A stretch of 64,000 bases of DNA, taken from IMG/VR virus record IMGVR_UViG_3300046516_001816, positions 1 to 64,000 of that record; one strand, given 5' to 3'. Below are positions 29,587 to 64,000 of the stretch, in pieces. Below the pieces are notes generated by a model. It made no database searches, was not told the origin of the DNA, and was given only the letters and a program-made list of their open reading frames with translations. Numbering within the stretch: the stretch's first letter is position 1; each line of letters opens with the position of its first letter. Made by a program: the position numbers and the translations under genes.

Positions 29587-30312
29587 ATGAATCCGAAGCA
29601 TATGGTCCGCGATGCGGACAAAGTCAAAGCCGCGCTGCGTGAAACGGAAGATGGCAAGTTGGTGGCACTCAAACCGGTGAAGATTTACGTGCCGACCCGG
29701 TTTGAGGAGCGCGGGCTCGCCAGCATCGGGATCGAAACGATGATCTGTGGTGTCTACGCGATGACCATCGAAGACAGCTACTACGCGGTGAGTCTGATCA
29801 ATGCAATGATCCGCGTGGAACCGTCCTCGATGATGAAGGTGCTGATCGACGGCGATGAGTACTTTGAATTCGAATTCGACAAGGGTGCCACGGTATTCCC
29901 CTCGCTGGATCTGGTGAAGACCGACTCGCTCGTGTACAAGATCTATAACGAGATCGTCGCTGGGGGGCACACGCCCTGGTATTTGAGCTACACCGACTTG
30001 GCGCTCATCTTCGATACGGCGAAAGAACACGCCGGCGCGAACATCGGGCAGAACCACGAAGTCACGGAGTTGCTCGTGTCCATCGTCGCACGCGACCCCA
30101 AGAACCGTCACGAGTATTACCGTAAGACGATTCAAGCGATCAGCGATCTTCAAACCAACAAGCCTGTCTTCATTCCGCTACGCTCGGTGGAATTTGCGGC
30201 GAGCAATACACTAAACAAACTCGCAGGCAGTTACTTCAGTCGCGGCGTTGTGAGTGCGCTTGTCACACCGACCACCCGTCTTGAGCGCTTGGACGCGCTT
30301 CTCAGTCAGTAG
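29587..30312 (+). CDS. Conserved phiKZ-like core protein (gp176-like)
   Basis: GGAG upstream; motifs RDADKVKAAL, PWYLSY.DL..IFD, NKLAGSYF. Confidence 0.72.
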   Translation: MNPKHMVRDADKVKAALRETEDGKLVALKPVKIYVPTRFEERGLASIGIETMICGVYAMTIEDSYYAVSLINAMIRVEPSSMMKVLIDGDEYFEFEFDKGATVFPSLDLVKTDSLVYKIYNEIVAGGHTPWYLSYTDLALIFDTAKEHAGANIGQNHEVTELLVSIVARDPKNRHEYYRKTIQAISDLQTNKPVFIPLRSVEFAASNTLNKLAGSYFSRGVVSALVTPTTRLERLDALLSQ

Positions 30313-30325
30313 TGGAGTTTTGAAA

Positions 30326-31078
30326 ATGAATAACTATGTGCGCTTTGGGTTCACGGCCTTGAATGGCCTGAACAAGACTGGCAGCATCAAGCCAGACGAT
30401 GCGGGGTATTACCCGGTGGTGCTGGGTGGGCTGGACATCTACAACTCGGCCAACCAGTTCTATCCGTACGCGCCGGCCAAGGAACTCTTCACGGGCTCCA
30501 GCCAGCTGATGCGCCGGGTGAGCAATGGCGCGCTGCGCGGGGAGTATGGTCATCCGAAGTTCATGCCGGGCATGAGTCAGGATCAGTACGCGCAACGCAT
30601 CCTCGCGATCTGGGAAGAGAACGTCTCGCACCACATCAAAGAAGTCACGCTGGATTTCGATAACTACAAGGATCCGTCAGGTCGCAAGTGTATCGCGATC
30701 ATCGGCATGGTGAAGCCCTCTGGTCCGCGCGGCGAAGACCTGCGCTCGTCGCTCGAGAACAAGGACGAGAACGTGTGTTTCTCGATCCGGGCGTTTACGC
30801 GTGACGAGACGTACGGTCGCACCACCAACCGGATCCTGCGCAACATCGTGACGTGGGACTATGTGAACGAGCCGGGCATCTCGATTGCCAACAAGTTCGC
30901 CTCACCCGCGCTGGAAGAGATCGACAACGTGATGTTCACGCGCAAGAATTTCGAGCGTGTGGCCAATTTGCCGGGCATCGGCATGGAGTCGGTGCGCCTC
31001 ACCACCAGCGAGTTGTTCGAGAGCCTCGGCTGGGGCACTCAGAAGGGCGTACAAGCGCCCGGCTGGGCCAAGTGGTAA
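30326..31078 (+). CDS. Prohead (head maturation) serine protease (gp175-like)
   Basis: Motifs GEYGHP (His), FSIR (Ser), TWDYVNEPG; C-terminal ALE and GME are possible autocleavage sites. Confidence 0.88.
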   Translation: MNNYVRFGFTALNGLNKTGSIKPDDAGYYPVVLGGLDIYNSANQFYPYAPAKELFTGSSQLMRRVSNGALRGEYGHPKFMPGMSQDQYAQRILAIWEENVSHHIKEVTLDFDNYKDPSGRKCIAIIGMVKPSGPRGEDLRSSLENKDENVCFSIRAFTRDETYGRTTNRILRNIVTWDYVNEPGISIANKFASPALEEIDNVMFTRKNFERVANLPGIGMESVRLTTSELFESLGWGTQKGVQAPGWAKW

Positions 31079-35151: not shown

Positions 35152-37266
35152 TTAGTTGCCCGACGTGAGGCTGTCGAGGCGGTACGATTCGATCGCGAGC
35201 GTGCCCACCGTCTTCATGTTCGGTGCGTAGATCTGGATCTTCAACGTCCAGCTGTAACCACGCTGAGCGTCCTGACCCGTGATCGTCGTGACCGGCACGA
35301 TCTTGAAACGGTTGTCGAAAATACCGTTGACGGCATTCGTCACGAACTTGTTGATCGCGCTGATCAACTGGCCGTTGCTCATGCTCGTCACGCCCGAGTA
35401 CGTACGACGGGCCTTGTCGCCGATCTTCTCCAGGTAGCAGATTGCCACCGCGTTGAAGAACGAGTTCAACACCGAGGTGTCGTCGTCATAGATCGTCTTC
35501 AGGGCCGGGAAGTACGCCTTGCGACGCTCGAACAGTTCCACACCCACCATACCGTTGGTCCAGTCCTTGTTGCGCACTTGCGCCGGCCAGAACGTCACGT
35601 TGATGTCGCTGAACAGATCGATTTCCGAACCCGGGGTCATGTCGAAGGACTTGCCCGACTTCCACTTGCCGTTGCCCGCACCCATGTACGCAGCCGCCTT
35701 GTAAGCGACTTCGAGCGTGAGGGGGAGCGGCTTCGTGTACTGCGAACCCGTGAGCGTGCCCGAACCGGGCACCACCATGCCGCGCATCGTCGGCGTACCG
35801 AAGTAGTCCGACTCCGGGAACTGCTGGAGGTAGGCCTTCAGTGCCACTGCCATCGACGATTCTTCCGATGCCGTCAGCGTGGGCGACAGGGTCGAGAACG
35901 TCGAGAGGACCACGAACAGATCCTTACGCTGCGAGATGAACTGCGCGAGCGCTTGCTTCGTGGTGAGCGGATAGCCCGAGTCGTAGAAGATCGATTCCGG
36001 GGAACCGACCATATCCATCACCGGGTTGGTCGTGTCGGCATACGCCGCGATGAAGTCCGACACCAGGCCTGCGAACAGCGTGTCGTTCATCGTACCGTCA
36101 GTGCCGCCGGCGGCGTACAGATTGCTGGCCGGCGACAGGTAGACTGCATCCACGTCACCCGTGTTGAGCGCGTACGTCGAGTACGGCACGCCTTGCGACG
36201 TTTGCGCGCCCACGAAGTTGAACAGCCACTCTTCGCCTGCGGCGCCCGTGAAGTCGCTGTAGGTCGTGAGTGCCGCGTTGTGCGCGTATTCCGCTGCGTA
36301 GAACTGGGCAACCAGCGCCTGGATGTTCGCATCGTACACGTGGATCTGACCGAACGGACCGAACTGGTCGGCCGTGCCGTCTGCCTTGTTCAGCGCCTGC
36401 CAGGCCGGGATAAAGATATCCTGGATCGACACTTGCGCATCGAGGGCGAGGTTGATCGTGTTCGGCTTGAACGTGAAGTCCAGGAACTGCGCGCCGTCGA
36501 TCGTCGAGATCGCCTTGGCCGTGCCCGTCGTGGTCGACTTCTGCACGCAGGCGATCCGGAACGGATACACGCCGTCGTTTTCGAGGATCGACTGGTTCAG
36601 CGGCGTGCTCGACTTCAACGTCGGGGCCCAGAGGCGGATCCCGTTGTTGTTGCCGTACGCGCCGAAGCTCGGCACTTGCAGGTCGAGGATCGGGGTGCGC
36701 TGGGACGTGCCCGTGCCGCCCGTGAACGTCAAGTCACCTGCCTTTTCTACCGCCGCGCCAAAATCGCTCACGCCTTCGACGACTTGGACTTGTTCCAGCA
36801 CCCATTTGGCGATGAAGCCCGGGGCCGTCGCGCCACCACCGGTGACCGGCACGGGGTTACCCGAGGTGTCGGTCTTGAACGAACCGTCGGCATTGCGCTG
36901 GTATTGCGGCATCTGGACGGGCAGCACGTCCAAGAACAGGCGCAGCGTGGCCGGGGGTGCTGCATCGGCCGGTTGCATGCGCTTGACTTGAATCGCGTTG
37001 CCCTGACCGTTCACGAGTTTCGCGAGTACGGTCGCGTGGTTAGCCCACGGCTTGCGCAGATCGAAAGAATCCGCGCCGTAAATCGTCGTCAGGTCCGCAC
37101 CGCTGACAAGCTCAGTCGTCAGTGGGCCTTGCTGGGTGTAGAGCGGAATCAGCGGCAAGTGCTGCGGAATCTGCTCCGGCGCCGGTGTCACCTGTTGGGT
37201 GCTGAGGTCATCAGCGCCCTGGAAGATGGTCATCGGAGCGCCATTGACAATCTGTGCAGTTGTCAT
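35152..37266 (-). CDS. Contractile tail sheath protein (gp29-like)
   Basis: 704 aa; motifs NGAP...G..D.S, PQHLP, YDSGY, FPES.YFGTP, D..RGYSW, NMKTV. Confidence 0.88.
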   Translation of the reverse strand: MTTAQIVNGAPMTIFQGADDLSTQQVTPAPEQIPQHLPLIPLYTQQGPLTTELVSGADLTTIYGADSFDLRKPWANHATVLAKLVNGQGNAIQVKRMQPADAAPPATLRLFLDVLPVQMPQYQRNADGSFKTDTSGNPVPVTGGGATAPGFIAKWVLEQVQVVEGVSDFGAAVEKAGDLTFTGGTGTSQRTPILDLQVPSFGAYGNNNGIRLWAPTLKSSTPLNQSILENDGVYPFRIACVQKSTTTGTAKAISTIDGAQFLDFTFKPNTINLALDAQVSIQDIFIPAWQALNKADGTADQFGPFGQIHVYDANIQALVAQFYAAEYAHNAALTTYSDFTGAAGEEWLFNFVGAQTSQGVPYSTYALNTGDVDAVYLSPASNLYAAGGTDGTMNDTLFAGLVSDFIAAYADTTNPVMDMVGSPESIFYDSGYPLTTKQALAQFISQRKDLFVVLSTFSTLSPTLTASEESSMAVALKAYLQQFPESDYFGTPTMRGMVVPGSGTLTGSQYTKPLPLTLEVAYKAAAYMGAGNGKWKSGKSFDMTPGSEIDLFSDINVTFWPAQVRNKDWTNGMVGVELFERRKAYFPALKTIYDDDTSVLNSFFNAVAICYLEKIGDKARRTYSGVTSMSNGQLISAINKFVTNAVNGIFDNRFKIVPVTTITGQDAQRGYSWTLKIQIYAPNMKTVGTLAIESYRLDSLTSGN

Positions 37267-42879: not shown

Positions 42880-45126
42880 ATGATTCTCTTCGAAGACGAT
42901 TGGAAGAAATACCCCACAGCGATCATCGATACGATGACCAGCAATCAGAGTTATGTGCGCTTAGCCAAGCTCTACCAGAAAATGGGGATTCGCAATAACG
43001 CGTTCTGTCTGGCGCTGATTAACCCACAGTTGCAAGGGCTCAATCCGTTTGATCCGGACTTGACGCTCGAACAGATGGCGATGATTGCCATTGAATGCGC
43101 GACCAACCCCTGGTACTACATGCGTGAAGTCGCGCGGGTGCCGGCCATTGGTGCAGGCGAAGCCACCCCCTTCGAGGGCAACCGCGGCAACGTCGCGTTG
43201 TTCTGGTGTTTCTTTAACCACGTGATGACGTTCCTGATTCAGATCCGTCAGACCGGTAAGTCGCTCTCCACTGACTTGCTGATGACGCTGCTGATGAACT
43301 TCATGTGTCAGAATACGGAAATCAACTTGTTGACCAAGGATGAGATTCTCCGTAAGACCAATATCGACCGGTTGAAGAAATGTATCGATGAATTGCCGCC
43401 GTACCTGATTCAACGGAACGCCAAACTCGATACGAATAACACCGAAGCGATTACCATCAAGGCGCTTCAGAACATCTACAAAACGCACGTGCCGCAAGCA
43501 TCGGAAAAAGGCGCGTATAAGCTTGGCCGTGGTTTGACCTCCCCGATTATGCATATCGACGAGGCCCCCTTCCAGCCGAACGTGAAGATCGCGGTGGGCT
43601 CGGCGCTGGCGGCCACGGGTGCGGCAGTCGATAAGGTGAAGGCCAAGGGCGGGATGTACGGCACCATCTTCACGACGACGGCGGGCAAGATCGATGACAA
43701 GGATGGCGCGTTTGTCTACGGGCTGCTCCAAGAAGCGGCGGTGTGGACCGAGAAGTTCTACGACGCGAAGAATGCGCAAGAGCTCGAGAAGATGATCCGC
43801 GGGGCCAGTCGGGGCGGCGGTGGTGGGGTGTTCCGGGTGAACATTACGCTGAACCACCGGCAGTTGGGCAAGACCGATGCGTGGTTGCGTGAAAAGCTCG
43901 AAGCCTCCACGGCCTCGGGTGATGACGCGAACCGCGATTACTTTAACATGTGGACAGCCGGCTCGCTCACCAATCCGCTGCCGATCAGTGTGCTGAAGGC
44001 GATTAGCCAAAGCGTGAAAGAAGTCAAGCACACCGAGATCAGTCCGGAAGGCTATATCACCCGCTGGTATATCGAAGAGCACGAGATCGAGGAACGCATG
44101 CGCACCTCGCGCTTTGTGGTCGGTATGGATACGTCCGAAGCCTCGGGGGGCGATGATATCTCGCTGGTGATGATGGACGTCGAGACGCTGGAAGTGATTG
44201 CTGCGGGCACGTTCAACGAAACCAACCTGATTACCTTTGCGTCCTGGGTGTGCTCCTGGTTGACCCGCTGGGAAACGACCACCATGATCATTGAGCGGCG
44301 CAGCACGGGCGGCATGTTGATGGATTACCTGTTGCTGATGCTGCCGTCGATGGGCGTGGATCCGTTTAAACGCGTCTACAACCGTGTGGTGCAAGAGTAC
44401 GACGAAATGCCCGATCGTTGGAAAGAGATTCAAGTGCCGATGGGGCGGCGGCCGCAAGAGATCTATGTGCGGCAAAAGAAGGCCTTTGGCTTCTCGACCT
44501 CCGGGGGCCTGGGTCAAACGTCACGCTCGGAGCTCTACTCCACCACGCTGCAACTGGGGGCCAAGCGCGCCTGTCACATGGTGCATGACAAGTCGCTGAT
44601 TGATCAGATCACCTCCTTGATTTCCAAGAACGGTCGCATCGATCACCCGACGGGCGGGCATGATGACATGGTGATTGGCTGGTTGCTCTGTCACTGGTTG
44701 CTCACCAAAGGCAAGCAGCTTTCCTACTACGGCATTGATCAGCGTCGGATTGGGACGGCTTTGGGCGGCGAGCAAACCGAAGAGACCAAGCGCGACCATG
44801 CCTTCCGTCAGGAGCAGGAGCTGTTGCGTGAGCGCATGGAAAAGCTCGGCGACGAGCTGGGTCGGGAGTCAGATGAGTGGATCATCAAACGACTGGAGCA
44901 TCAGCTGCGCATTCTCAACAGCCAAGTGGTCCGGGAAGAAGGCGAAGTGTTCTCGCTTGATACCTTGATCAACAAGGCCAAGGAACAGCGCCGCGAACGC
45001 GTGCGCTCCAAGTCAGGTATGCAGAAGTCGGGCTATGCGTCGTCGCAGTATGGTAACGCGCATCTCACGGTGACCGACAAACCGCCCACGATGGGCAGTT
45101 ATTACAACCGTTTTATGATGCGCTAA
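42880..45126 (+). CDS. terL: Terminase large subunit
   Basis: Walker A RQTGKS, Walker B MHIDE, coupling motif TTTAG, nuclease motifs GMDTSEA and HDD. Confidence 0.92.
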   Translation: MILFEDDWKKYPTAIIDTMTSNQSYVRLAKLYQKMGIRNNAFCLALINPQLQGLNPFDPDLTLEQMAMIAIECATNPWYYMREVARVPAIGAGEATPFEGNRGNVALFWCFFNHVMTFLIQIRQTGKSLSTDLLMTLLMNFMCQNTEINLLTKDEILRKTNIDRLKKCIDELPPYLIQRNAKLDTNNTEAITIKALQNIYKTHVPQASEKGAYKLGRGLTSPIMHIDEAPFQPNVKIAVGSALAATGAAVDKVKAKGGMYGTIFTTTAGKIDDKDGAFVYGLLQEAAVWTEKFYDAKNAQELEKMIRGASRGGGGGVFRVNITLNHRQLGKTDAWLREKLEASTASGDDANRDYFNMWTAGSLTNPLPISVLKAISQSVKEVKHTEISPEGYITRWYIEEHEIEERMRTSRFVVGMDTSEASGGDDISLVMMDVETLEVIAAGTFNETNLITFASWVCSWLTRWETTTMIIERRSTGGMLMDYLLLMLPSMGVDPFKRVYNRVVQEYDEMPDRWKEIQVPMGRRPQEIYVRQKKAFGFSTSGGLGQTSRSELYSTTLQLGAKRACHMVHDKSLIDQITSLISKNGRIDHPTGGHDDMVIGWLLCHWLLTKGKQLSYYGIDQRRIGTALGGEQTEETKRDHAFRQEQELLRERMEKLGDELGRESDEWIIKRLEHQLRILNSQVVREEGEVFSLDTLINKAKEQRRERVRSKSGMQKSGYASSQYGNAHLTVTDKPPTMGSYYNRFMMR

Positions 45127-45630: not shown

Positions 45631-46857
45631 TTACTTCGTGTAATACGTCATGGTCATTGTCCGGGCAACCAAATACAACAGTACCGCAGTGCGCACCGAC
45701 GCAACGACGCTTTCGTTTTTATTTCCCGTAGCCTGCTTGACACACCATTCGGTCTTCTCGCGCAACGAGAACAACGCGGGATCGATCGAGCGAGAAGACG
45801 TGTACACCCCGCGCAATCGGGCCAGAAGCGTCGGGAGGTCGACGTGGTTGGCCACCATCATGCGTTCTTCCGCTAGGTAGTCGAAGCTATGGATCAGCAC
45901 TTCATTCAGGAGCTCTTCAATCTTCTTGGCCCCTGAACGACGATAGTTGTCTGAGAGCCACACGAGCGTTTCGCGAAACAGGCGCGGGGGCGTCGTGTAC
46001 ATCAGCTTCTCGATAATGCCGAGGAGCTCCTCTCGGATAAACGACCCGCGGTCCGTCACGATCGCATGCAAGTAGCGCGTGTAGGCAAGCAGGTTCTTGT
46101 TCTTGTCTTTCAGGATGACTTCGCCGTCATAGTCCACCAGGGCCGAGGTCGACTGAATGCGCACGCCCTGGTGGTGAATCGTCAAGAACACGTCATAGAT
46201 GTTCTTCAGCATATCGCGAATACGACCTTGCGTGTCGTTAAGCAGATACACCACGCCGAGATCGTTATCGAACTTGACAATGGTTTCCCAGTGAATGCTC
46301 TCAGGGCTGATCAAGTCTTCGCTGCGCTGATTCAGTACCGCGTTCCAGCTGCCGAGCTGCTTGATCGCATACTTGTTCGAGAGTGACGCATACGTCGCTT
46401 CCGCGGTTTCCCGGTTCGCCGGATAACGGAAGTGACGATACAGTCGCGAGGTGAGGAACTTGTACTGCAACACCAAGGCCACGTCCATCATGCCCTGGTG
46501 CTTTTGCTCGCGCGAGAGCTTGGGCGACGTGTAGATCGCATGCAGCAACCAGGCGCACGAGATATTGATCGTGTCTGAGGACACGTGGTGGTTCGCATTC
46601 ACTGTGGGCAGGGCGAGCAGTTCTTCGGTCAAAGCATGTTGGTCGACGTGTAAGATTTCATCGAACCAGGCACTCTGGTCCGCGTCGGTAAAACGCACGA
46701 CTTGCACGCCCGTCAGATTGCCACCGAAGAAGTTGATATGATCTTCGTTCTTGTGCATCCAGCGGGTGCGATACGTGGAGAGCTTCTTGATGAAAGCCGT
46801 ATCGATGATAAGACCTCGACAGGCCTCGTTAAAGACATCCTGAATATTCTTGGCCAT
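45631..46857 (-). CDS. Conserved phiKZ-like virion protein (gp32-like)
   Basis: GAGGA upstream; motifs KNEDHINFFGGNLTGV, NDTQGRIRD, YTSSRS.D. Confidence 0.75.
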   Translation of the reverse strand: MAKNIQDVFNEACRGLIIDTAFIKKLSTYRTRWMHKNEDHINFFGGNLTGVQVVRFTDADQSAWFDEILHVDQHALTEELLALPTVNANHHVSSDTINISCAWLLHAIYTSPKLSREQKHQGMMDVALVLQYKFLTSRLYRHFRYPANRETAEATYASLSNKYAIKQLGSWNAVLNQRSEDLISPESIHWETIVKFDNDLGVVYLLNDTQGRIRDMLKNIYDVFLTIHHQGVRIQSTSALVDYDGEVILKDKNKNLLAYTRYLHAIVTDRGSFIREELLGIIEKLMYTTPPRLFRETLVWLSDNYRRSGAKKIEELLNEVLIHSFDYLAEERMMVANHVDLPTLLARLRGVYTSSRSIDPALFSLREKTEWCVKQATGNKNESVVASVRTAVLLYLVARTMTMTYYTK

Positions 46858-47510: not shown

Positions 47511-48170
47511 TTAACGCTGCACCAGAGTCATCTCAAGCTCCTTTCCATCTGGCAAGAAGACACTCTCGCCAAAGGTCGGGAACTTCGCGCTCTCGTGCAG
47601 TTCAAAGTTCTTCGCATCTCGTACCAAGTACGCGATCACGATCTCGTTGGTGATATGGAACATCCGCGCATGTTCGCGCGCAAAGTCCACACTCACGATG
47701 ATATCGCCAAAGTCTTCGCTGGTGCCGCGATTAAACGTGAACGACAACATGCGCTCAGGCACATACGCTGCTTTCTGACCGACGTCCACCGTAGCGAACG
47801 CGGCCTCCGGTCCTTTGTTGCTCGAAGGAAAGCCCCGGAACAACTTGCCGCGCGACTTTGGCTGCTGAATCTTCTCGAACACCTTCTTCGCTTCGCGCAG
47901 CTTAGGCAGGATCGCATAGTCGGTATGAACAATCCAGCGCTCGACCGCCGCGAGGAGCTCAGCGTGCTTGATCATCTCCCGCACCGCGTGTTCGTCGATG
48001 TCTTCCTTCTGGAAGGTGACTTGCGGGAAGTACCGCGCCCGCCCGGCCAAGAGCATCAGCAATTTGCCAAAGAAACCTTTCGACTGATATTGCTCGTCGT
48101 AGGCTTCTTCTTTCTCCAGGCTGATGCCCAGGCTCTGCCAGTCGTCTTCGGCGCGCTGCTCAGTGGCTAT
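47511..48170 (-). CDS. ORF lacking a good start; probable -1 frameshift (or indel) continuation of the upstream gene
   Basis: The frame stays open 36 codons upstream of the TTG at 48062 (IATEQRAEDDWQSLGISLEKEEAY...) back to the A9 run. Confidence 0.6.
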   Translation of the reverse strand: MATEQRAEDDWQSLGISLEKEEAYDEQYQSKGFFGKLLMLLAGRARYFPQVTFQKEDIDEHAVREMIKHAELLAAVERWIVHTDYAILPKLREAKKVFEKIQQPKSRGKLFRGFPSSNKGPEAAFATVDVGQKAAYVPERMLSFTFNRGTSEDFGDIIVSVDFAREHARMFHITNEIVIAYLVRDAKNFELHESAKFPTFGESVFLPDGKELEMTLVQR

Positions 48171-49078
48171 TTTTTTTTGCCGGCAAACTTTAGCGCGGTA
48201 GCCTTGTCGTGGGACTGGCTGAAGTACGCGGCCAGTTGCTTGGGCGTCGTGATCTTGTCGCCCGCTTCCTTCGTGATCTTCTTGCCCTTAAAGTGCAGTT
48301 CGATCTCGCCGATGAATTCCTTCATCTTCTCAGCCTTGAGCTTGGTGATCTTCTCACCGGCCGGGAAGAACTCGCTGTCCGCACCGAGGTTCACGTCGAA
48401 CTTGTCCTGCGCCATCTTGACGACGACCCCGAGCACGTCCGGATCACAGAAGTCAAGCCCTTGGCCTTCATCACCCGCGGCATGGCCTTCGGTGAGCTTG
48501 GCCTGGCCCTTACCGAACTTCAGTGCCTTGACCTTGTCCTTGACTTCCTTGCGCTTTTCGGCGAAGGCTTCGAGCGACGGGAAGATCTGCACGCCGGCGC
48601 GATCACACATTGCTTCGAGGGCTTTGGCGTACTCGTTGACCGATTCGGTCGCCGGGTCGCCATTCATCACCAGCACAAAGTCGGGGTTTTCCGGATCGAA
48701 CTCGGTGATCTCTTGCGAGACTTCCACCACGTCTTCGGGTTTCACGTCCGCTTCGTCGACACCGTACACGGTGGTAGCGCCATCCTGAACGTCTTCTTCG
48801 CCCAGGATCTGAACGTCTTCAGCCAGGTCAGCCAGGGAGAGCGCGTCATTGGCTTGCGACTCGGTCGCCACGCCTTCGACAGCGGCTTCTTCCTGTTGCT
48901 CGACCGGCTTGTTCTTGTTGTACATCTGAGCGAGCGCTTGCGAGAACTGCTCAGCGAGCGGCCCTTTCAGGACCATCAATTCTTTCTGGCCCTCTTCATG
49001 AGCTTCGGGTTGGCCACTACCAGTGTCCAGGGTACCGAGTTCACCTTCGAGCGCCATTTGCAAAAACGAAGTCATCAT
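48167..49078 (-). CDS. Acidic putative head protein with A/S-x-E sites and a C-terminal ACP-like segment
   Basis: Multiple ALE/ATE/SLE; LGADS and EIELHF...DKITTPKQLAAYF; the start is one of the ATGs at 49075-49087. Confidence 0.75.
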   Translation of the reverse strand: MMTSFLQMALEGELGTLDTGSGQPEAHEEGQKELMVLKGPLAEQFSQALAQMYNKNKPVEQQEEAAVEGVATESQANDALSLADLAEDVQILGEEDVQDGATTVYGVDEADVKPEDVVEVSQEITEFDPENPDFVLVMNGDPATESVNEYAKALEAMCDRAGVQIFPSLEAFAEKRKEVKDKVKALKFGKGQAKLTEGHAAGDEGQGLDFCDPDVLGVVVKMAQDKFDVNLGADSEFFPAGEKITKLKAEKMKEFIGEIELHFKGKKITKEAGDKITTPKQLAAYFSQSHDKATALKFAGKKK

Positions 49079-49170
49079 CATCCTCATTGGAGAGTGCAGT
49101 GCACAGAATAAGGGGTAAATCTTATTCGGCATTAGAGCGCCTGCCACGAAAAGGTAGGGTTAGGTATGTC

Positions 49171-49680
49171 CTGGCCCCCGCCGAGCCCGCCTGCGCCCGC
49201 TGCGCGCCCCCCAGCCTGGTCCTCGCCCGCCCCGCGCCCCGGCCGCCGCCCGCCGCGCCCATTACGTTCTCATTTGGAGGTTTTCTTTACCATCCGGTAG
49301 ATCTTCTACCAACATTAAACCAGTCAGTGCTTTGCCGTTGTTTGCTTCGCCGTTAAGGCTTTGCTACCTAGAGGATGGGCCATCGAGCCCATCCGTCTAT
49401 ACATCTACTTCGATTTTTCCAAAAAGAAAACACTTCATGCAAGGGGTTGGTCGTTCTCCCCTGAGCTGGTCCTGTTGGGACCAGCGATCTTTTCATAGAC
49501 ACCAATATGTCATTCTAGTATTTTCTTACTGCATACTGGACATAGTTATGCATTGAGGTACTATAGAACAATAAGAAAAACAAGAGGTACCCTCAATACT
49601 TATATATGGGAAGTTATGGTTTTGGAAGAGGGGCCCATATTCTAGTAAAAGGGGGAGACCCCCTTTTACTCATATATAAG
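49171..49680. other. Non-coding divergence region: C-rich tract followed by AT-rich nested palindromes
   Basis: 49171-49260 is almost all C/G. Palindromes at 49552-49597, 49599-49608/49671-49680 and 49644-49670. Confidence 0.7.
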
Positions 49681-54917: not shown

Positions 54918-55913
54918 ATGACGACTCATGAACGTGAGCGCGGTCGCGTGCGGTTGTATGCATGCGGTGGCGCTGGCATCAACATGGGCAGCAAGCTCGC
55001 GCACTTCAAGAACGAACCCAGCGAAGCTTACGCCCAGCTCGACACGGTTTACGTCGACACCTCTAAGTCCAACCTCCATGCGAAGATCGATGCGGAATCG
55101 ATCTATCTGATCGACGGCCTCGACGGCTCCGGTCAAGTGCGCAAGGAAAACTACGGCGCGATTTCCGAACGCGTGCGGGATATCCTGCAAACGTTCAAGC
55201 CCGTGGACCTGAACCTGATGCTGCATTCGCTCTCCGGCGGCAGCGGCTCCGTGATCGCCCCATCGATTGTCTCGGAACTGCTCTCGAAGGATCTGCCGAC
55301 CATCGTCATCTGCGTGGGTGACGACTCGACGAAGAAATTCGCCGAGAACACGCTCAATACGCTGAAGTCGTACGAGCAGATCGCGAAGCTGCGCAAGGCG
55401 CCGGTGTTGATGTACTATCTGCAAAACGGCCCCGACATGCCGCGTGCGAAGATCGACGAGCGGGTGCAGGCGCTGGTCGCCTCGCTATGCATGCTGTTCT
55501 CGCGTCGCAACCGTGAGCTCGACAGCAAAGACCTGTACAACTGGGTGAACTACCCGAATGTCACGTCGCATGCACCGGGCCTCACGGCACTCACGCTGGT
55601 TACGTCGCTCAACCCAGCTACGCTCGGCACGCTGGGCAACCTGATCTCGATCGCCACCCTCACCAAGGGTGATGTCGACCCGACGCTCTCGATTCGCCCC
55701 GAAGTGCAGTACGTGGGCTACGTCGACGATACGCTCGGCGGCGACTTCAAGGCGCCGTATCATTACGTTACCTCCGATGGTGTCTTCGGCGACGTCGCGG
55801 CGCACCTCAATGGCGTGCTGCGCGAACTCGACGACCAATCGGCAGCTCGCCTGAAAAAGGGCGGCATCAGCACCGGTGCGGACCAGGTCACTGATTCCGG
55901 CATGGTGTTGTAA
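54918..55913 (+). CDS. phuZ: Phage tubulin PhuZ
   Basis: Motifs ACGGAGIN, VDTS.SN, DGSG..R, tubulin signature SGGSGS, ELD..D, and C-terminal DSGMVL. Confidence 0.95.
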   Translation: MTTHERERGRVRLYACGGAGINMGSKLAHFKNEPSEAYAQLDTVYVDTSKSNLHAKIDAESIYLIDGLDGSGQVRKENYGAISERVRDILQTFKPVDLNLMLHSLSGGSGSVIAPSIVSELLSKDLPTIVICVGDDSTKKFAENTLNTLKSYEQIAKLRKAPVLMYYLQNGPDMPRAKIDERVQALVASLCMLFSRRNRELDSKDLYNWVNYPNVTSHAPGLTALTLVTSLNPATLGTLGNLISIATLTKGDVDPTLSIRPEVQYVGYVDDTLGGDFKAPYHYVTSDGVFGDVAAHLNGVLRELDDQSAARLKKGGISTGADQVTDSGMVL

Positions 55914-56998: not shown

Positions 56999-57241
56999 GT
57001 GGAAAACATCGAACAACAAGTCAAGCGCATCGTCGCTGCGCAACTCGGTCTGGAAGTGGCTGACATCAAGAACGACAGCCATATCACGCACGACCTCGGC
57101 GCGGACTCGCTCGACAAGATCGAACTCGTGATGGCGCTCGAAGACGATTTCAAGCTGGACATTCGCGACGAGGATGAAGAAAAGCTCCTCACCGTGCAGA
57201 ACATCATCGACTACGTGTCGGCCGAAAAGGCCAACGCGTAG
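56999..57241 (+). CDS. acpP: Acyl carrier protein
   Basis: 80 aa, acidic; phosphopantetheine motif [20 protein letters not shown]; TVQ..IDY. Confidence 0.95.
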
Positions 57242-62079: not shown

Positions 62080-62435
62080 TATGTTACGACGGAGTGCCAT
62101 GCTCCGTGTAGGAAGGGTGTTGATGCGTGCTCCTCGGGCTTTTGGTGGCGGGCGCGGGCAGCAACACTAATGGGATCGGCTAAACCCATTTGCTAAGTGT
62201 CGAAAGATGACGACAGCGAGAATCTCGTTGGGGAACGAGAAGACGCCAACCAGGAAGGGTTGAAGCTGGTTTCTTTAAAGGTGGTGTGCCAAGGCTTTTC
62301 CTTGGGGCATGCGGTGCATCACTGAACACGGGGCTGATCGCGCCCTCGTGAAGGAGAAGCTAAGCTCCCGTTCCTGTTTTTCACGTTGGGGAGGGTCTTT
62401 CGGGAACCCTCCCCTTCTTTTTTCCTTTTATGCCG
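62080..62435 (+). ncRNA. Candidate stand-alone sRNA made of tandem hairpins (region C)
   Basis: Seven or more consecutive hairpins bounded by two terminators. Confidence 0.5.
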
Positions 62436-62493
62436 TCTCGCTTATTTTTACCGTCCGGGTGTACCTTATGAGAATAAGACAAGGAGTTCCCCC

Positions 62494-64000
62494 GTGGCAT
62501 TTGACAACCCCTTTGCTTTACAGGCTAATGAATACGTCCGCGATCTGGACGTGTTCAAGCATTACGTGAATCAGACCGTGACGTACCTCGTGAAGATGAC
62601 CGGGTGTACGGAAGACGAAGCGAAAGAGTACGTGAAAAAGAACCTCGGTCCCGACGGCAAGTTCCCGTTCAAGGATCCGAAGGTGTGGTATCTCGAGCGC
62701 AATGAGCACGGCGATCGGGAAAAGAAAGAAGGCACGCTGGCGCAGTATATCGGTGAGGCGATTCAGAAGGAGCAGTTGATTGCCCCGACCTTCACCACGT
62801 ATTTGCCGGTCAAGCAAAAGCAGTCGCTGCTCGCCATGTTCATTGACGCGAACGTGAAGCGACGCAAGGTGGCTAAGCACGCCATGTTCGAAGCCAAGAT
62901 GGCGGGTAACGAAGTGCTGCGAATTTTGAAGGATAACGAGCAGACCAATATGAAGCTCTCGAACAATGCTTGTTCGGGCGCGCACGTGTCGGCCTCCACG
63001 CCGCTGTATAACAAGACCGCTCACTCGACGCTGACCTCTAACTGCCGGGTGACCGCAGGCTATGGCTCGGCCAATAACGAGAAGTTCCTGAACGGCAATC
63101 GGCACTATTGGTCGCCGGACATCGTGAAGTACAATATCACCTCGATCATCAACAACACGGACTATGTGGCGATTCGCCATGCGATGGATAAGTTTGACAT
63201 TCGCAATCCGTCGGTCGAAGAAGTGATGGACTGCATCGAGTATTCCACCAAGCTCTACTGGTGGGATAAGCGCCATATGCAGTTGATTCGTCAGTATGTG
63301 GAAACATTGACGCCGATCGAGCGCGCGGCGTTTGTCTACACAGGTGACCTGTACCACCTGATGAAATACAACGACGGCGTGGCCCGTACCTTTATCGAAC
63401 GCTTGTCGTTGCCGGTGAAGGTGGCGCATCCAGAACCGGGTCCGGTGATCAAGAACGCCCACGAGGATCATCTGGCGCTGGCTAAACAGTTGCTGCCTGA
63501 TCTGATGCGCGGCAAGAAGTTGGAAGACATCAAGGGCACGGAAACGGAAGGCATTCTGGCGTCGACCGTGCAGCATGTGGCCGATACCGTGACTGCATAT
63601 GCAGATCTGATCAAAGCGTTTTGGGTCACGAAGAATGTCCCGGCGTCGCTTGCGCGCTTTCCGGAATCCATTCGTCGTTCCGCACTGATGGGTGACACCG
63701 ACTCGACCATCTTTACCGTGCAGGATTGGGTGAGCTGGTACAACAACGGTCGTATTGGGTATGATGATCGTTCGTCGGGGGTGGCAGCTACGATGATCTT
63801 TCTGTCAGCCCAGGCCATCGTGCACTTGCTCGCCCGAATGTCGGCGAACTTTGGCGTGGAAGAAAAGCGGACGTTCCAGACCGCGATGAAGAACGAGTAC
63901 AAGTTTGACGTGTTCGTTCCGACGCAGGTGGCCAAACACTACTATGCGCTGATCGGCTGTCAGGAGGGCAACCTCTACAAGGAGTTTGACACCGAAATCA
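62494..64000 (+). CDS. Family-B DNA polymerase, polymerase-domain subunit (phiKZ gp50-like), 3'-truncated by the window
   Basis: Absent from the ORF track. AAGGAG at 62481 and GTG at 62494 give MAFDNPFALQANEYVRDLD...; motif B-like QTNMKLSNNACSG; motif C GDTDS in frame at 63691. Confidence 0.9.
   Translation, partial: MAFDNPFALQANEYVRDLDVFKHYVNQTVTYLVKMTGCTEDEAKEYVKKNLGPDGKFPFKDPKVWYLERNEHGDREKKEGTLAQYIGEAIQKEQLIAPTFTTYLPVKQKQSLLAMFIDANVKRRKVAKHAMFEAKMAGNEVLRILKDNEQTNMKLSNNACSGAHVSASTPLYNKTAHSTLTSNCRVTAGYGSANNEKFLNGNRHYWSPDIVKYNITSIINNTDYVAIRHAMDKFDIRNPSVEEVMDCIEYSTKLYWWDKRHMQLIRQYVETLTPIERAAFVYTGDLYHLMKYNDGVARTFIERLSLPVKVAHPEPGPVIKNAHEDHLALAKQLLPDLMRGKKLEDIKGTETEGILASTVQHVADTVTAYADLIKAFWVTKNVPASLARFPESIRRSALMGDTDSTIFTVQDWVSWYNNGRIGYDDRSSGVAATMIFLSAQAIVHLLARMSANFGVEEKRTFQTAMKNEYKFDVFVPTQVAKHYYALIGCQEGNLYKEFDTEI

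What the first reader, a model, noticed from the sequence alone, without database searches (positions are those of the whole stretch)
48210..48450. Degenerate ACP-like domain inside a putative virion head protein
The segment DVLGVVVKMAQDKFDVNLGADSEFF...KEFIGEIELHFKGKKITKEAGDKITTPKQLAAYFSQ contains LGADS and an end resembling the AcpP ALEEEF...I..EEAEKITTVQ..IDY pattern. The Ser-to-Phe spacing is about 14 aa longer than in AcpP. It follows A/S-x-E sites, so the prohead protease could release it. Since the genome also has a canonical ACP, this could be a packaged or ejected ACP mimic.
Basis: partly seen in the sequence, partly recalled or inferred. Interest (0 to 1): 0.65.

Follow-up and report, generated by a model that had tools for sequence, protein, structure and literature searches.

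The report
Serine-less ACP-fold domain, jumbo phage
The flagged segment really does fold like an acyl carrier protein, but it has lost the serine that carries the cofactor, so it is best read as a carrier-protein fold reused as a passive, probably docking, module at the end of an uncharacterised jumbo-phage protein encoded beside head-assembly genes.

Summary
Confirmed: window 48210-48450 (minus strand) encodes the C-terminal about 80 residues of a 302-304 aa protein in a 285-kb phiKZ-like, nucleus-forming jumbo phage. AlphaFold2 gives a confident four-helix domain. All 50 listed matches in each of two VIA lists and one Foldseek list are ACP or PCP carrier domains (VIA Z 7.6-10.2). Sequence profiles agree: 15 of 16 PDB hits are ACPs, one family member passes Pfam PF00550's cut-off, and hhalign gives 89.6%.

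Not confirmed: 'LGADS' is not a phosphopantetheine site. It lies in loop 1, about 14 residues before the true position, which explains the odd spacing. It reads LGEDT in a 90%-identical homologue and H, D or E in distant ones. The true serine position holds Lys/Ala. The domain is neutral to basic (pI 7-9.7; the phage's real ACP is 4.2).

The conserved part of the family is the acidic N-terminal about 190 aa. It carries an invariant A-x-E|S site matching the phiKZ/SPN3US head-protease logo, and the protease gene is in the window. The gene lies upstream of a phiKZ gp32-like head protein gene, next to the large terminase. Stand-alone 87-90 aa copies of the domain sit in structural modules of unrelated phages.

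Virion location, processing and ejection remain inferences. An 'ACP mimic' role is unlikely.

The parts
48167..49081 (-). Gene of the conserved acidic jumbo-phage protein. It is called as 304 aa (P0002). The likeliest start is the ATG at 49075, giving 302 aa; the longest frame starts at a GTG at 49147. The stop is at 48167-48169.
48206..48454 (-). C-terminal carrier-protein-fold (pseudo-ACP) domain, P0002 residues 210-292. Helices span 214-227, 247-263, 271-276 and 280-289. A disordered Lys-rich tail follows (48170-48205).
   Evidence: AF2 pLDDT is 83-92. Carrier proteins dominate the full-length Foldseek list and fill all 50 rows of the domain-only Foldseek list and both VIA lists; all three atlas rows are PF00550 clusters. 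Profile evidence.
48374..48388 (-). The 'LGADS' pentapeptide (P0002 232-236). It lies in the loop between helix I and helix II and is not the carrier serine site.
   Evidence: Column of the Ser: STTSTTTHDEEH. Helix II starts 11 residues later. Alignment registers.
48332..48337 (-). Lys249-Ala250 of P0002, the position that aligns with the phosphopantetheinylated Ser of ACPs. No Ser occurs here in any family member.
   Evidence: HMM alignments to PDB ACPs and to the phage's own ACP. MAFFT places it one residue earlier. Column: AAAEEEATTRRT.
48857..48871 (-). Invariant head-protease-type site V-A-T-E|S (P0002 71-75), followed by the invariant SQANDA(L/I).
   Evidence: [ASG]-x-E is present in 30 of 30 homologues, with E, S, Q, A, N, D, A invariant. 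It matches the SPN3US gp245 logo of A-x-E with P4 Val/Ala and P1' Ser (PMC10052503).
49043..49054 (-). Second conserved A-L-E|G site near the N-terminus (P0002 10-13).
   Evidence: Present in 29 of 30 homologues.
48515..48772 (-). Small alpha/beta domain of the conserved N-terminal region (P0002 104-189), containing the TTVYGV...VKPEDVVEVSQ...ALE..C..GV motifs. Its fold is not assigned.
   Evidence: pLDDT is 65-84. Conservation. Only weak XPF/Hef-like and DUF2726-like similarity was found.
45631..46857 (-). Downstream co-directional gene. It is the orthologue of phiKZ gp32, which is annotated 'structural head protein' (phrog_2921).
   Evidence: phmmer E 4e-89 to phiKZ gp32
42880..45126 (+). 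Large terminase subunit, convergent with the gene array.
30254..31078 (+). Head maturation protease of the phiKZ gp175 type. This is the enzyme that would cut at A-x-E sites.
   Evidence: phmmer E 3.2e-36 to phiKZ gp175
56999..57241 (+). Canonical AcpP-like ACP of the phage, carrying DLGADSLD. It is not part of the target protein and was used as the internal comparison.
   Evidence: PF00550 at 43 bits. About 65% identity to betaproteobacterial AcpP. pI 4.2.

Best explanation
The segment is a genuine but degenerate carrier-protein (ACP/PCP) fold. It has the four helices in the canonical order and a helix I-II loop of normal length. It is remotely homologous to PP-binding domains but lacks the phosphopantetheine-accepting serine and the acidic surface, so it cannot act as an acyl carrier. 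'LGADS' is a lineage-specific look-alike inside loop 1.

The domain is one of several interchangeable C-terminal modules on a conserved, very acidic protein family. That family includes FLC9 gp22, RP12 ORF22 and RSF1 ORF20, all from phiKZ-like phages of beta-proteobacteria and their relatives.

Inferred mechanism. The protein is made from the late morphogenetic gene array upstream of the gp32-like head protein gene, beside TerL. Its N-terminal about 74 residues act as a propeptide, which the gp175-type head protease cuts at the invariant V/A-A-x-E|S site. The mature protein (alpha/beta domain, linker and basic pseudo-ACP domain) stays with the head or assembly machinery. There the pseudo-ACP module serves as a passive protein (or nucleic-acid) docking domain, through its invariant D-x-x-F-F-P loop and T-P-x-x-x-A-x-Y-F helix IV.

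Shown: the fold, the remote homology, the loss of the Ser, the charge, the conservation pattern, the synteny and the presence of the protease. Inferred: processing, virion or assembly location, and the docking role.

The confidence of 0.6 is for the statement as a whole. By part it is about 0.9 for the carrier fold, about 0.85 for no phosphopantetheinylation, and about 0.5 for the morphogenetic or virion role.
For: Fold:
- AF2 without templates gives pLDDT 83-92 for residues 210-290 and four helices; the domain-only model agrees.
- Foldseek against PDB: ACPs dominate the list for the full-length model and fill all 50 rows for the domain-only model, with TM by target 0.58-0.76.
- VIA-align against 48,161 chains: all 50 rows are carrier proteins, Z 7.6-10.2, rmsd 1.7-3.2 A for most rows, over 67-81 residues.
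- ESM Atlas: all rows are PF00550 clusters, TM 0.67-0.75.

Sequence:
- The family profile against PDB gives 15 ACPs among 16 hits, best E 0.006, full length and in register.
- PF00550 hits 4 of 12 members; P0011 scores 25.6 bits against the 20.8 cut-off.
- hhalign against an AcpP alignment gives 89.6% probability.
- Among all 1372 ORFs of the genome, the profile's only non-self hit is the phage's own ACP (E 6e-4; the next is E>4).

Loss of function: the Ser-equivalent column is AAAEEEATTRRT and the LGADS-Ser column is STTSTTTHDEEH. The pI is 7-9.7 against 4.2. No PPTase is encoded.

Context:
- The A-x-E|S site is invariant in 30 of 30 homologues and matches the published protease logo.
- The protease gene lies in the window.
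- Synteny of family gene, gp32-like head gene and TerL holds in the window, FLC9, RSF1, RP12, L007 and L009.
- Stand-alone copies of the domain lie about 2.2 kb downstream of a major head protein gene in unrelated phages of 44-46% GC.
- The C-termini of the family are modular.
Against: - The window's own domain gives no Pfam hit even at E 10, and Foldseek E-values are weak (0.02-0.3), as expected for an 80-residue helical domain.
- VIA Z of about 10 is, by the tool's own note, within the range helical bundles can reach by chance. The argument rests on the uniformity of the hit lists and on the independent sequence profiles.
- No direct evidence places the protein in virions. The RP31 virion proteome (32 proteins, low coverage) lists neither the family member ORF21 nor the gp32-like ORF22.
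- A-x-E triplets are common in an acidic protein; P0002 has 11 of them.
- No partner of the domain is known.
Confidence: 0.6

Rival explanations
1. Functional carrier domain: the LGADS serine (or another residue) is phosphopantetheinylated and the domain carries an acyl or aminoacyl group, as the reader suggested testing.
For: There is an exact LGADS match to the canonical motif, the carrier fold is real, and a true ACP exists in the same genome.
Against: - The Ser changes to Thr in the 90%-identical homologue and to H, D or E in distant ones.
- It sits mid-loop, 11 residues before helix II, not at the helix N-terminus where PPTases act.
- All profile alignments place the true site at Lys249/Ala250.
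- No column of the domain has a conserved Ser.
- The phage encodes no PPTase.
Confidence: 0.03
2. Packaged or ejected ACP mimic: the domain imitates host ACP to bind and block ACP-dependent host enzymes or regulators after injection.
For: It has an ACP fold. The conserved protease-type site and head-gene synteny make packaging conceivable. The variable C-terminal modules recall effector cargo on a conserved anchor.
Against: - ACP partners recognise the acidic helix II and usually the prosthetic group. Here the domain is neutral to basic (pI 7-9.7 against 4.2) and lacks the Ser.
- Many family members lack the domain altogether.
- Stand-alone copies sit among structural genes rather than early genes.
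- The conserved cleavage site would not free the domain.
Confidence: 0.07
3. Assembly factor that does not stay in the virion: a scaffold-like or chaperone protein of head assembly or packaging. It would be degraded at its A-x-E sites or left behind, with the pseudo-ACP domain docking it to a head or terminase component.
For: - The N-terminal region is very acidic and partly disordered, with several A-x-E sites.
- The gene lies between head genes and TerL.
- The family member is absent from the RP31 virion proteome.
Against: The RP31 proteome is shallow and also misses the gp32-like protein that other annotations call a head protein. Nothing distinguishes a transient from a permanent association.
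Confidence: 0.3
4. Convergent helical bundle: the domain is not homologous to carrier proteins and only shares a common four-helix arrangement.
For: The window's own sequence has no Pfam hit. Only 39 columns align in hhalign. The VIA note warns that helical models can reach such Z values by chance.
Against: - Three independent sequence tests all point to ACPs and nothing else, in the same register: 15 of 16 PDB hits, PF00550 above the cut-off for P0011, and the genome-internal search.
- Both 50-row VIA lists and the domain-only Foldseek list are exclusively carrier proteins.
Confidence: 0.08

Closest known systems
Type II acyl carrier proteins (AcpP; Pfam PF00550 PP-binding), including the phage's own ACP at window 56999-57241
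   Same: Both have about 80 residues with helix I, a roughly 20-residue loop, helix II, a short helix III and helix IV. The pattern hydrophobic-E-x-x-F ... I ... A/E ... (I/L)-T-T-(V/P) ... Y is shared across helix II-IV. Structural superposition gives Z up to 10.2 at rmsd 1.7-2.6 A.
   Different: There is no Ser at the helix II N-terminus (Lys/Ala instead). The pI is 7-9.7 rather than about 4. An invariant D-x-x-F-F-P loop motif is absent from ACPs. The domain is fused to a 210-residue unrelated N-terminal region, and identity to ACPs is only 14-25%.
Carrier-fold proteins that serve as structural subunits of large complexes (complex I NDUFAB1/SDAP, Ycf2-FtsHi motor ACP, MmpL5-AcpM, mitoribosomal ACP-like subunits)
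   Same: These are among the best structural matches (7ard_U, 6zk9_j, 8xqx_J, 9rfu_G, 8ux4_8). They show that the fold is repeatedly recruited as a docking subunit.
   Different: From established knowledge, NDUFAB1-type subunits keep the acyl-phosphopantetheine, which inserts into LYR partners. The phage domain has no attachment site, so any docking must be purely protein-surface based. No partner is known here.
Head proteins of phiKZ-like phages processed by the gp175 (phiKZ) / gp245 (SPN3US) prohead protease
   Same: There is an N-terminal acidic region ending in A-x-E with P4 Val/Ala and P1' Ser (PMC10052503). The protease orthologue is in the window. The gene is in an array with a gp32-like head protein gene.
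   Different: No proteomic evidence exists for this family. No homologue was found in the phiKZ region around gp32. The seven residues after the cut (SQANDA + L/I) are invariant, which is more than a cleavage site needs.
T4 internal proteins (IPI-III, Alt) with an N-terminal capsid-targeting sequence and variable bodies
   Same: The concept is the same: a conserved N-terminal part ending at a protease site, variable C-terminal modules among relatives, and basic mature domains. This rests on my own knowledge.
   Different: There is no sequence relationship. The conserved part here is about 190 residues and includes a folded domain, not a 10-residue peptide. Packaging and ejection are untested.

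Membership tests
PP-binding / acyl carrier protein (PF00550) | Four-helix carrier fold with a long helix I-II loop | tested here: met
   AF2 pLDDT 83-92. Carrier proteins dominate the full-length Foldseek list and fill all 50 rows of the domain-only Foldseek list and both VIA lists; all three atlas rows are PF00550 clusters.
PP-binding / acyl carrier protein (PF00550) | Profile match at or above Pfam's gathering score | tested here: inconclusive
   The window's domain has no hit at E<=10. Homologue P0011 scores 25.6 bits against the 20.8 cut-off, and three others score 15-20 bits, over profile positions 32-66 only. hhalign gives 89.6%. 15 of 16 PDB hits are ACPs.
PP-binding / acyl carrier protein (PF00550) | Conserved Ser (D-S-L) at the N-terminus of helix II that accepts phosphopantetheine | tested here: not met
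   The equivalent column is AAAEEEATTRRT, neighbouring columns hold K, T, D, S or P, and no conserved Ser occurs anywhere in the domain.
PP-binding / acyl carrier protein (PF00550) | Acidic protein with an acidic recognition helix II | tested here: not met
   The pI is 7.0-9.7 in all 12 members, against 4.2 for the phage's ACP.
PP-binding / acyl carrier protein (PF00550) | Actual phosphopantetheinylation | not testable with these tools
   This needs mass spectrometry. No phage PPTase was found (PF01648).
Substrates of the phiKZ gp175 / SPN3US gp245 head maturation protease | A-x-E cleavage motif (P4 Val/Ala, P1' Ser preferred) after an N-terminal propeptide | tested here: met
   V-A-T-E|S at residues 71-75. 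[ASG]-x-E is present in 30 of 30 homologues and Ser at P1' is invariant. Logo from PMC10052503.
Substrates of the phiKZ gp175 / SPN3US gp245 head maturation protease | Cognate protease encoded by the phage | tested here: met
   Window 30254..31078 (+), phmmer E 3.2e-36 to phiKZ gp175.
Substrates of the phiKZ gp175 / SPN3US gp245 head maturation protease | Presence in proheads or virions and an observed processed N-terminus | not testable with these tools
   The only related proteome (RP31, 32 proteins) lists neither ORF21 nor the gp32-like ORF22, so it is uninformative.

The most novel reading that the evidence does not exclude
A phage has turned a carrier-protein fold into a packaged, protease-matured head protein. 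The protein is ejected with the DNA and uses the serine-less ACP-like module to engage a host or phage-nucleus factor that normally reads ACP-shaped proteins. That would make it a virion-delivered pseudo-ACP effector, with related modules swapped in and out among relatives.
Probability: 0.07. Interest if true: 0.8.

Novelty: new variant of a known kind. Interest (0 to 1): 0.45.

Why it matters
Carrier proteins are defined by their prosthetic group. A conserved, serine-less carrier fold in phage morphogenetic gene arrays would add phages to the short list of systems that reuse this fold purely as a docking module. It occurs fused in phiKZ-like jumbo phages and free-standing in smaller phages.

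It also labels an otherwise unannotated, conserved gene family next to the terminase and a gp32-like head gene of nucleus-forming jumbo phages. The family shows a testable protease site and interchangeable C-terminal modules, which is a handle on how these phages load accessory proteins into their very complex heads.

For annotation practice, it shows that a perfect 'LGADS' can be a false phosphopantetheine site even inside a true ACP fold.

Tried and rejected
- Pfam and PHROGs on the whole protein and on the two halves gave nothing usable.
- Megablast of the region against phage records gave no match, and tblastn found only FLC9 gp22.
- An exhaustive profile search of 1.84 billion representatives with the domain found only 5 proteins at E<=0.001, and no ACPs at that library size.
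- BFVD fold search of the full model was weak, apart from phage ACPs and RSF1 ORF20.
- The N-terminal region has no assignable fold. The XPF/Hef and DUF2726 similarities are weak and no nuclease-type catalytic motif is conserved.
- Pfam Peptidase_S77 did not find the head protease; phmmer with phiKZ gp175 did.
- No paralogue of either half was found in the genome.
- Literature searches found no description of a serine-less ACP-like phage structural domain.
- The RP31 virion proteome was uninformative.
- The G-rich tract upstream has no Rfam family and no unusual folding energy.
- Complex prediction was not run, because no specific partner is claimed.
- The read-mapping tools were not used, because expression data would not decide the question for this metagenomic phage.
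- No alternative genetic code was needed.

Full report
**What is at the coordinates**

The window is the first 64 kb of a 284,983-bp virus record. It is a phiKZ-like, nucleus-forming jumbo phage.
- Its large terminase (42880..45126 +) is 57% identical to that of Burkholderia phage FLC9 and 55% to Ralstonia phages RP12/RP31.
- The window also holds a PhuZ tubulin (54918..55913 +) and a divergent family B DNA polymerase.
- A phiKZ gp175-type head maturation protease lies at 30254..31078 (+) (phmmer E 3.2e-36).

The finding lies on the minus strand in ORF 48167..49147.
- The called product is 304 aa (P0002).
- Homologues begin M-[AT]-S-[LF]-L, and a GAGGA box sits 5 nt before the ATG at 49075, so the true product is probably 302 aa.

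**Is it ACP-like? Structure**

AlphaFold2 was run without templates on an alignment of 30 homologues.
- Residues 210-290 of P0002 come out as a confident domain (block pLDDT 83-92).
- The helices span 214-227, 247-263, 271-276 and 280-289. This is the order and spacing of a carrier protein: helix I, an approximately 19-residue loop, helix II, a short helix III and helix IV.
- A domain-only model gives the same topology at lower confidence.

| Search | Result |
|---|---|
| Foldseek vs PDB | ACPs dominate the full-length list; all 50 rows of the domain-only list are carrier proteins; TM by target 0.58-0.76, rmsd about 2.5-3.5 A |
| VIA-align vs 48,161 representative chains | 50 of 50 rows are ACP/PCP domains for both models; Z 7.6-10.2 over 67-81 residues |
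| ESM Atlas shape search | only PF00550 clusters; TM 0.67-0.75 |

By the tool's own note, Z of about 10 can arise for helical bundles. The weight therefore lies in the complete uniformity of the lists and in the independent sequence evidence.

**Is it ACP-like? Sequence**

- The whole protein and the window's own domain have no Pfam hit.
- A profile of the 11-12 homologous domains, searched against all PDB sequences, returns 16 hits. Fifteen of them are ACPs. The best has E 0.006 and is aligned over the full length in register.
- Four of twelve family members hit PF00550. P0011 scores 25.6 bits, above the 20.8 cut-off.
- hhalign against an alignment of AcpP-type ACPs gives 89.6% probability over helices II-IV.
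- Among all 1372 ORFs of the phage genome, the profile's only hit besides itself is the phage's own canonical ACP (E 6e-4; the next hit is E>4).

I conclude that the domain is a remote homologue of carrier proteins.

**Is LGADS a phosphopantetheine site? No**

- All sequence alignments place ACP's modified Ser at Lys249/Ala250 of P0002, within 'KLKAEK'.
- The model starts helix II at residue 247. The LGADS Ser is residue 236, mid-loop, 11 residues earlier.
- The helix I-II loop has the normal length.
- The Ser is not conserved. The column reads S T T S T T T H D E E H, and the 90%-identical homologue P0003 has LGEDT.
- The column of the true site reads A A A E E E A T T R R T. No column of the domain has a conserved Ser.
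- The domain is neutral to basic (pI 7.0-9.7 in all members), against 4.2 for the phage's ACP.
- The phage encodes no PPTase.

What is invariant instead is D-x-x-F-F-P in the loop and T-P...A..(Y)F in helix IV. The domain is a pseudo-carrier.

**The rest of the protein and its family**

Homologues share the N-terminal approximately 190 residues (30, plus FLC9 gp22, RP12 ORF22 and RSF1 ORF20 by profile). Reading from the N-terminus, this region contains:
- a conserved M-A-S-L-L-K-x-A-L-E-G start;
- an amphipathic helix (LKGPLAEQF...);
- acidic linkers;
- an invariant A-x-E-S-Q-A-N-D-A-(L/I);
- a small alpha/beta domain (TTVYGV...VKPEDVVEVSQ...ALE..C..GV).

The region has pI about 4.1.

The C-terminus is modular. 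It is absent in proteins of 181-229 aa, is the pseudo-ACP domain in 11, is a different alpha+beta module in P0015 and P0019-22, and is yet another tail in FLC9 gp22. An exhaustive search of 1.84 billion representative proteins found only five with the domain, so it is rare.

**Context**

In the window, the gene is followed on the same strand by:
- a 183-aa gene (phrog_29772);
- a 144-aa gene;
- a 408-aa gene, the orthologue of phiKZ gp32 ('structural head protein'; E 4e-89; called a virion or head protein in several other records).

The array converges on TerL. The order of family gene, variable small inserts, gp32-like gene and TerL recurs in FLC9, RSF1, RP12 and two metagenomic relatives.

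Independently, stand-alone 87-90 aa versions of the domain occur in unrelated phages of 44-46% GC (P0032, P0062-64). They lie inside co-directional structural arrays, about 2.2 kb downstream of a major head protein gene (phrog_2522, E 3.5e-13). Two unrelated lineages thus place the domain among morphogenetic genes.

**Protease site**

The published logo for the SPN3US prohead protease is A-x-E, with Val/Ala preferred at P4 and Ser at P1', and all substrate cleavages remove N-terminal propeptides (PMC10052503).
- The family has [ASG]-x-E|S at P0002 residues 72-75 in 30 of 30 members. P4 is mostly Val/Ala/Thr and Ser at P1' is invariant.
- A-L-E|G at residues 10-13 is present in 29 of 30 members.
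- The site nearest the pseudo-ACP domain (G-D-E 203-205) is not conserved. If the protease acts, it removes about 74 N-terminal residues and leaves the domain attached.
- The invariance of SQANDA(L/I) after the cut exceeds what a cleavage site needs and is unexplained.

Direct evidence is lacking. The RP31 virion proteome (32 proteins from gel bands) contains neither the family member (ORF21) nor the gp32-like ORF22.

**Most likely mechanism**

The protein is a late, morphogenesis-linked protein. Its N-terminal propeptide is removed by the head protease, and its C-terminal pseudo-ACP module acts as a cofactor-free docking domain.
- Shown: the fold, the remote homology, the loss of the serine, the charge, the conservation, the synteny and the presence of the protease.
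- Inferred: processing, location and the docking role.

Rivals:
- a transient assembly factor that does not remain in the virion, which I cannot separate from the main reading;
- an ejected ACP mimic, disfavoured by the charge, the missing Ser and the structural-module context of the free-standing copies;
- a functional carrier, essentially excluded by conservation and position;
- mere convergence, unlikely given three concordant sequence tests.

**Novelty**

I found no description of such a domain in phage structural contexts. It is a new variant of a known kind: a serine-less carrier fold recruited by phages. Interest is moderate. The structural assignment is solid, the biology is open, and the more exciting 'ejected ACP mimic' reading is improbable on present evidence.

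**Limits**

- The N-terminal alpha/beta domain could not be folded alone, so its fold stays unassigned.
- No binding partner was tested.
- No read-mapping or alternative genetic code was used.

Noticed in passing
window 49163-49269 (and upstream of the orthologous gene in L007/L016, L009/L018, L013, L015, L021): A tract of about 107 bp with 83% G+C lies 90-190 nt upstream of the target gene's start, G-rich on the gene's sense strand. It is one of only two such windows in the 285-kb genome. An A-rich box followed by a GGGGCGCGGCGGG-type tract recurs upstream of the gene in relatives with only 35-47% protein identity. It has no Rfam family, and its folding energy is not below that of shuffles (z +1.46). 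It may be a leader, a promoter or a G-quadruplex-type element.
   Followed up: partly
window 56999-57241 (+); G001:C1:97396-97596, G002:C1:263348-263551, G005:C1:35676-35876 and 36440-36643: The phage's canonical ACP has DLGADSLD and is about 65% identical to betaproteobacterial AcpP. In related metagenomic jumbo phages an ACP gene is conserved 6-10 kb from the family gene, and one relative has two. FLC9, RP12, RSF1 and phiKZ have none. No phage PPTase was found. Why this clade keeps an ACP is unexplained.
   Followed up: partly
L036/L037 8001-8264, L038/L039 8001-8273, L003 807-1070: Free-standing 87-90 aa versions of the pseudo-ACP domain occur in phages of 44-46% GC. They lie between small connector-sized genes and 295-, 201- and 878-aa genes, downstream of a major head protein gene. 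The neighbouring 295-aa protein carries a CxxC...CxxC motif (phrog_2806, unknown function).
   Followed up: partly
window 30254-31078 (+): A head maturation protease of the phiKZ gp175 type lies in the window (E 3.2e-36). Pfam Peptidase_S77 does not detect it.
   Followed up: yes
window 54918-55913 (+) and 62386-63999 (+): A PhuZ-type tubulin (PF00091 and TubZ_C_2) and a divergent family B DNA polymerase (PF20286, E 6e-174) mark the phage as a nucleus-forming, phiKZ-like type.
   Followed up: no
window 47511-48062 (-): The 183-aa gene directly downstream of the target (phrog_29772) is shared only with RP12/RP31 and Xanthomonas phage RTH11. In RP12 it lies more than 100 kb from the terminase region, so it is a mobile insert in the array. 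It shows a weak YbeY-like match (E 0.0036, below the cut-off).
   Followed up: no
L009 7013-7762 (-) and L036 12558-13316 (+): GIY-YIG homing-endonuclease-like genes are inserted in the syntenic arrays of relatives. This fits the variable small inserts seen between the family gene and the gp32-like gene.
   Followed up: no
P0024, P0027: N-terminal-only family members are recorded under Paraburkholderia genome assemblies on contigs of 284-286 kb. These are most likely whole jumbo-phage genomes co-assembled with bacterial isolates, which hints at the host range of the clade.
   Followed up: no
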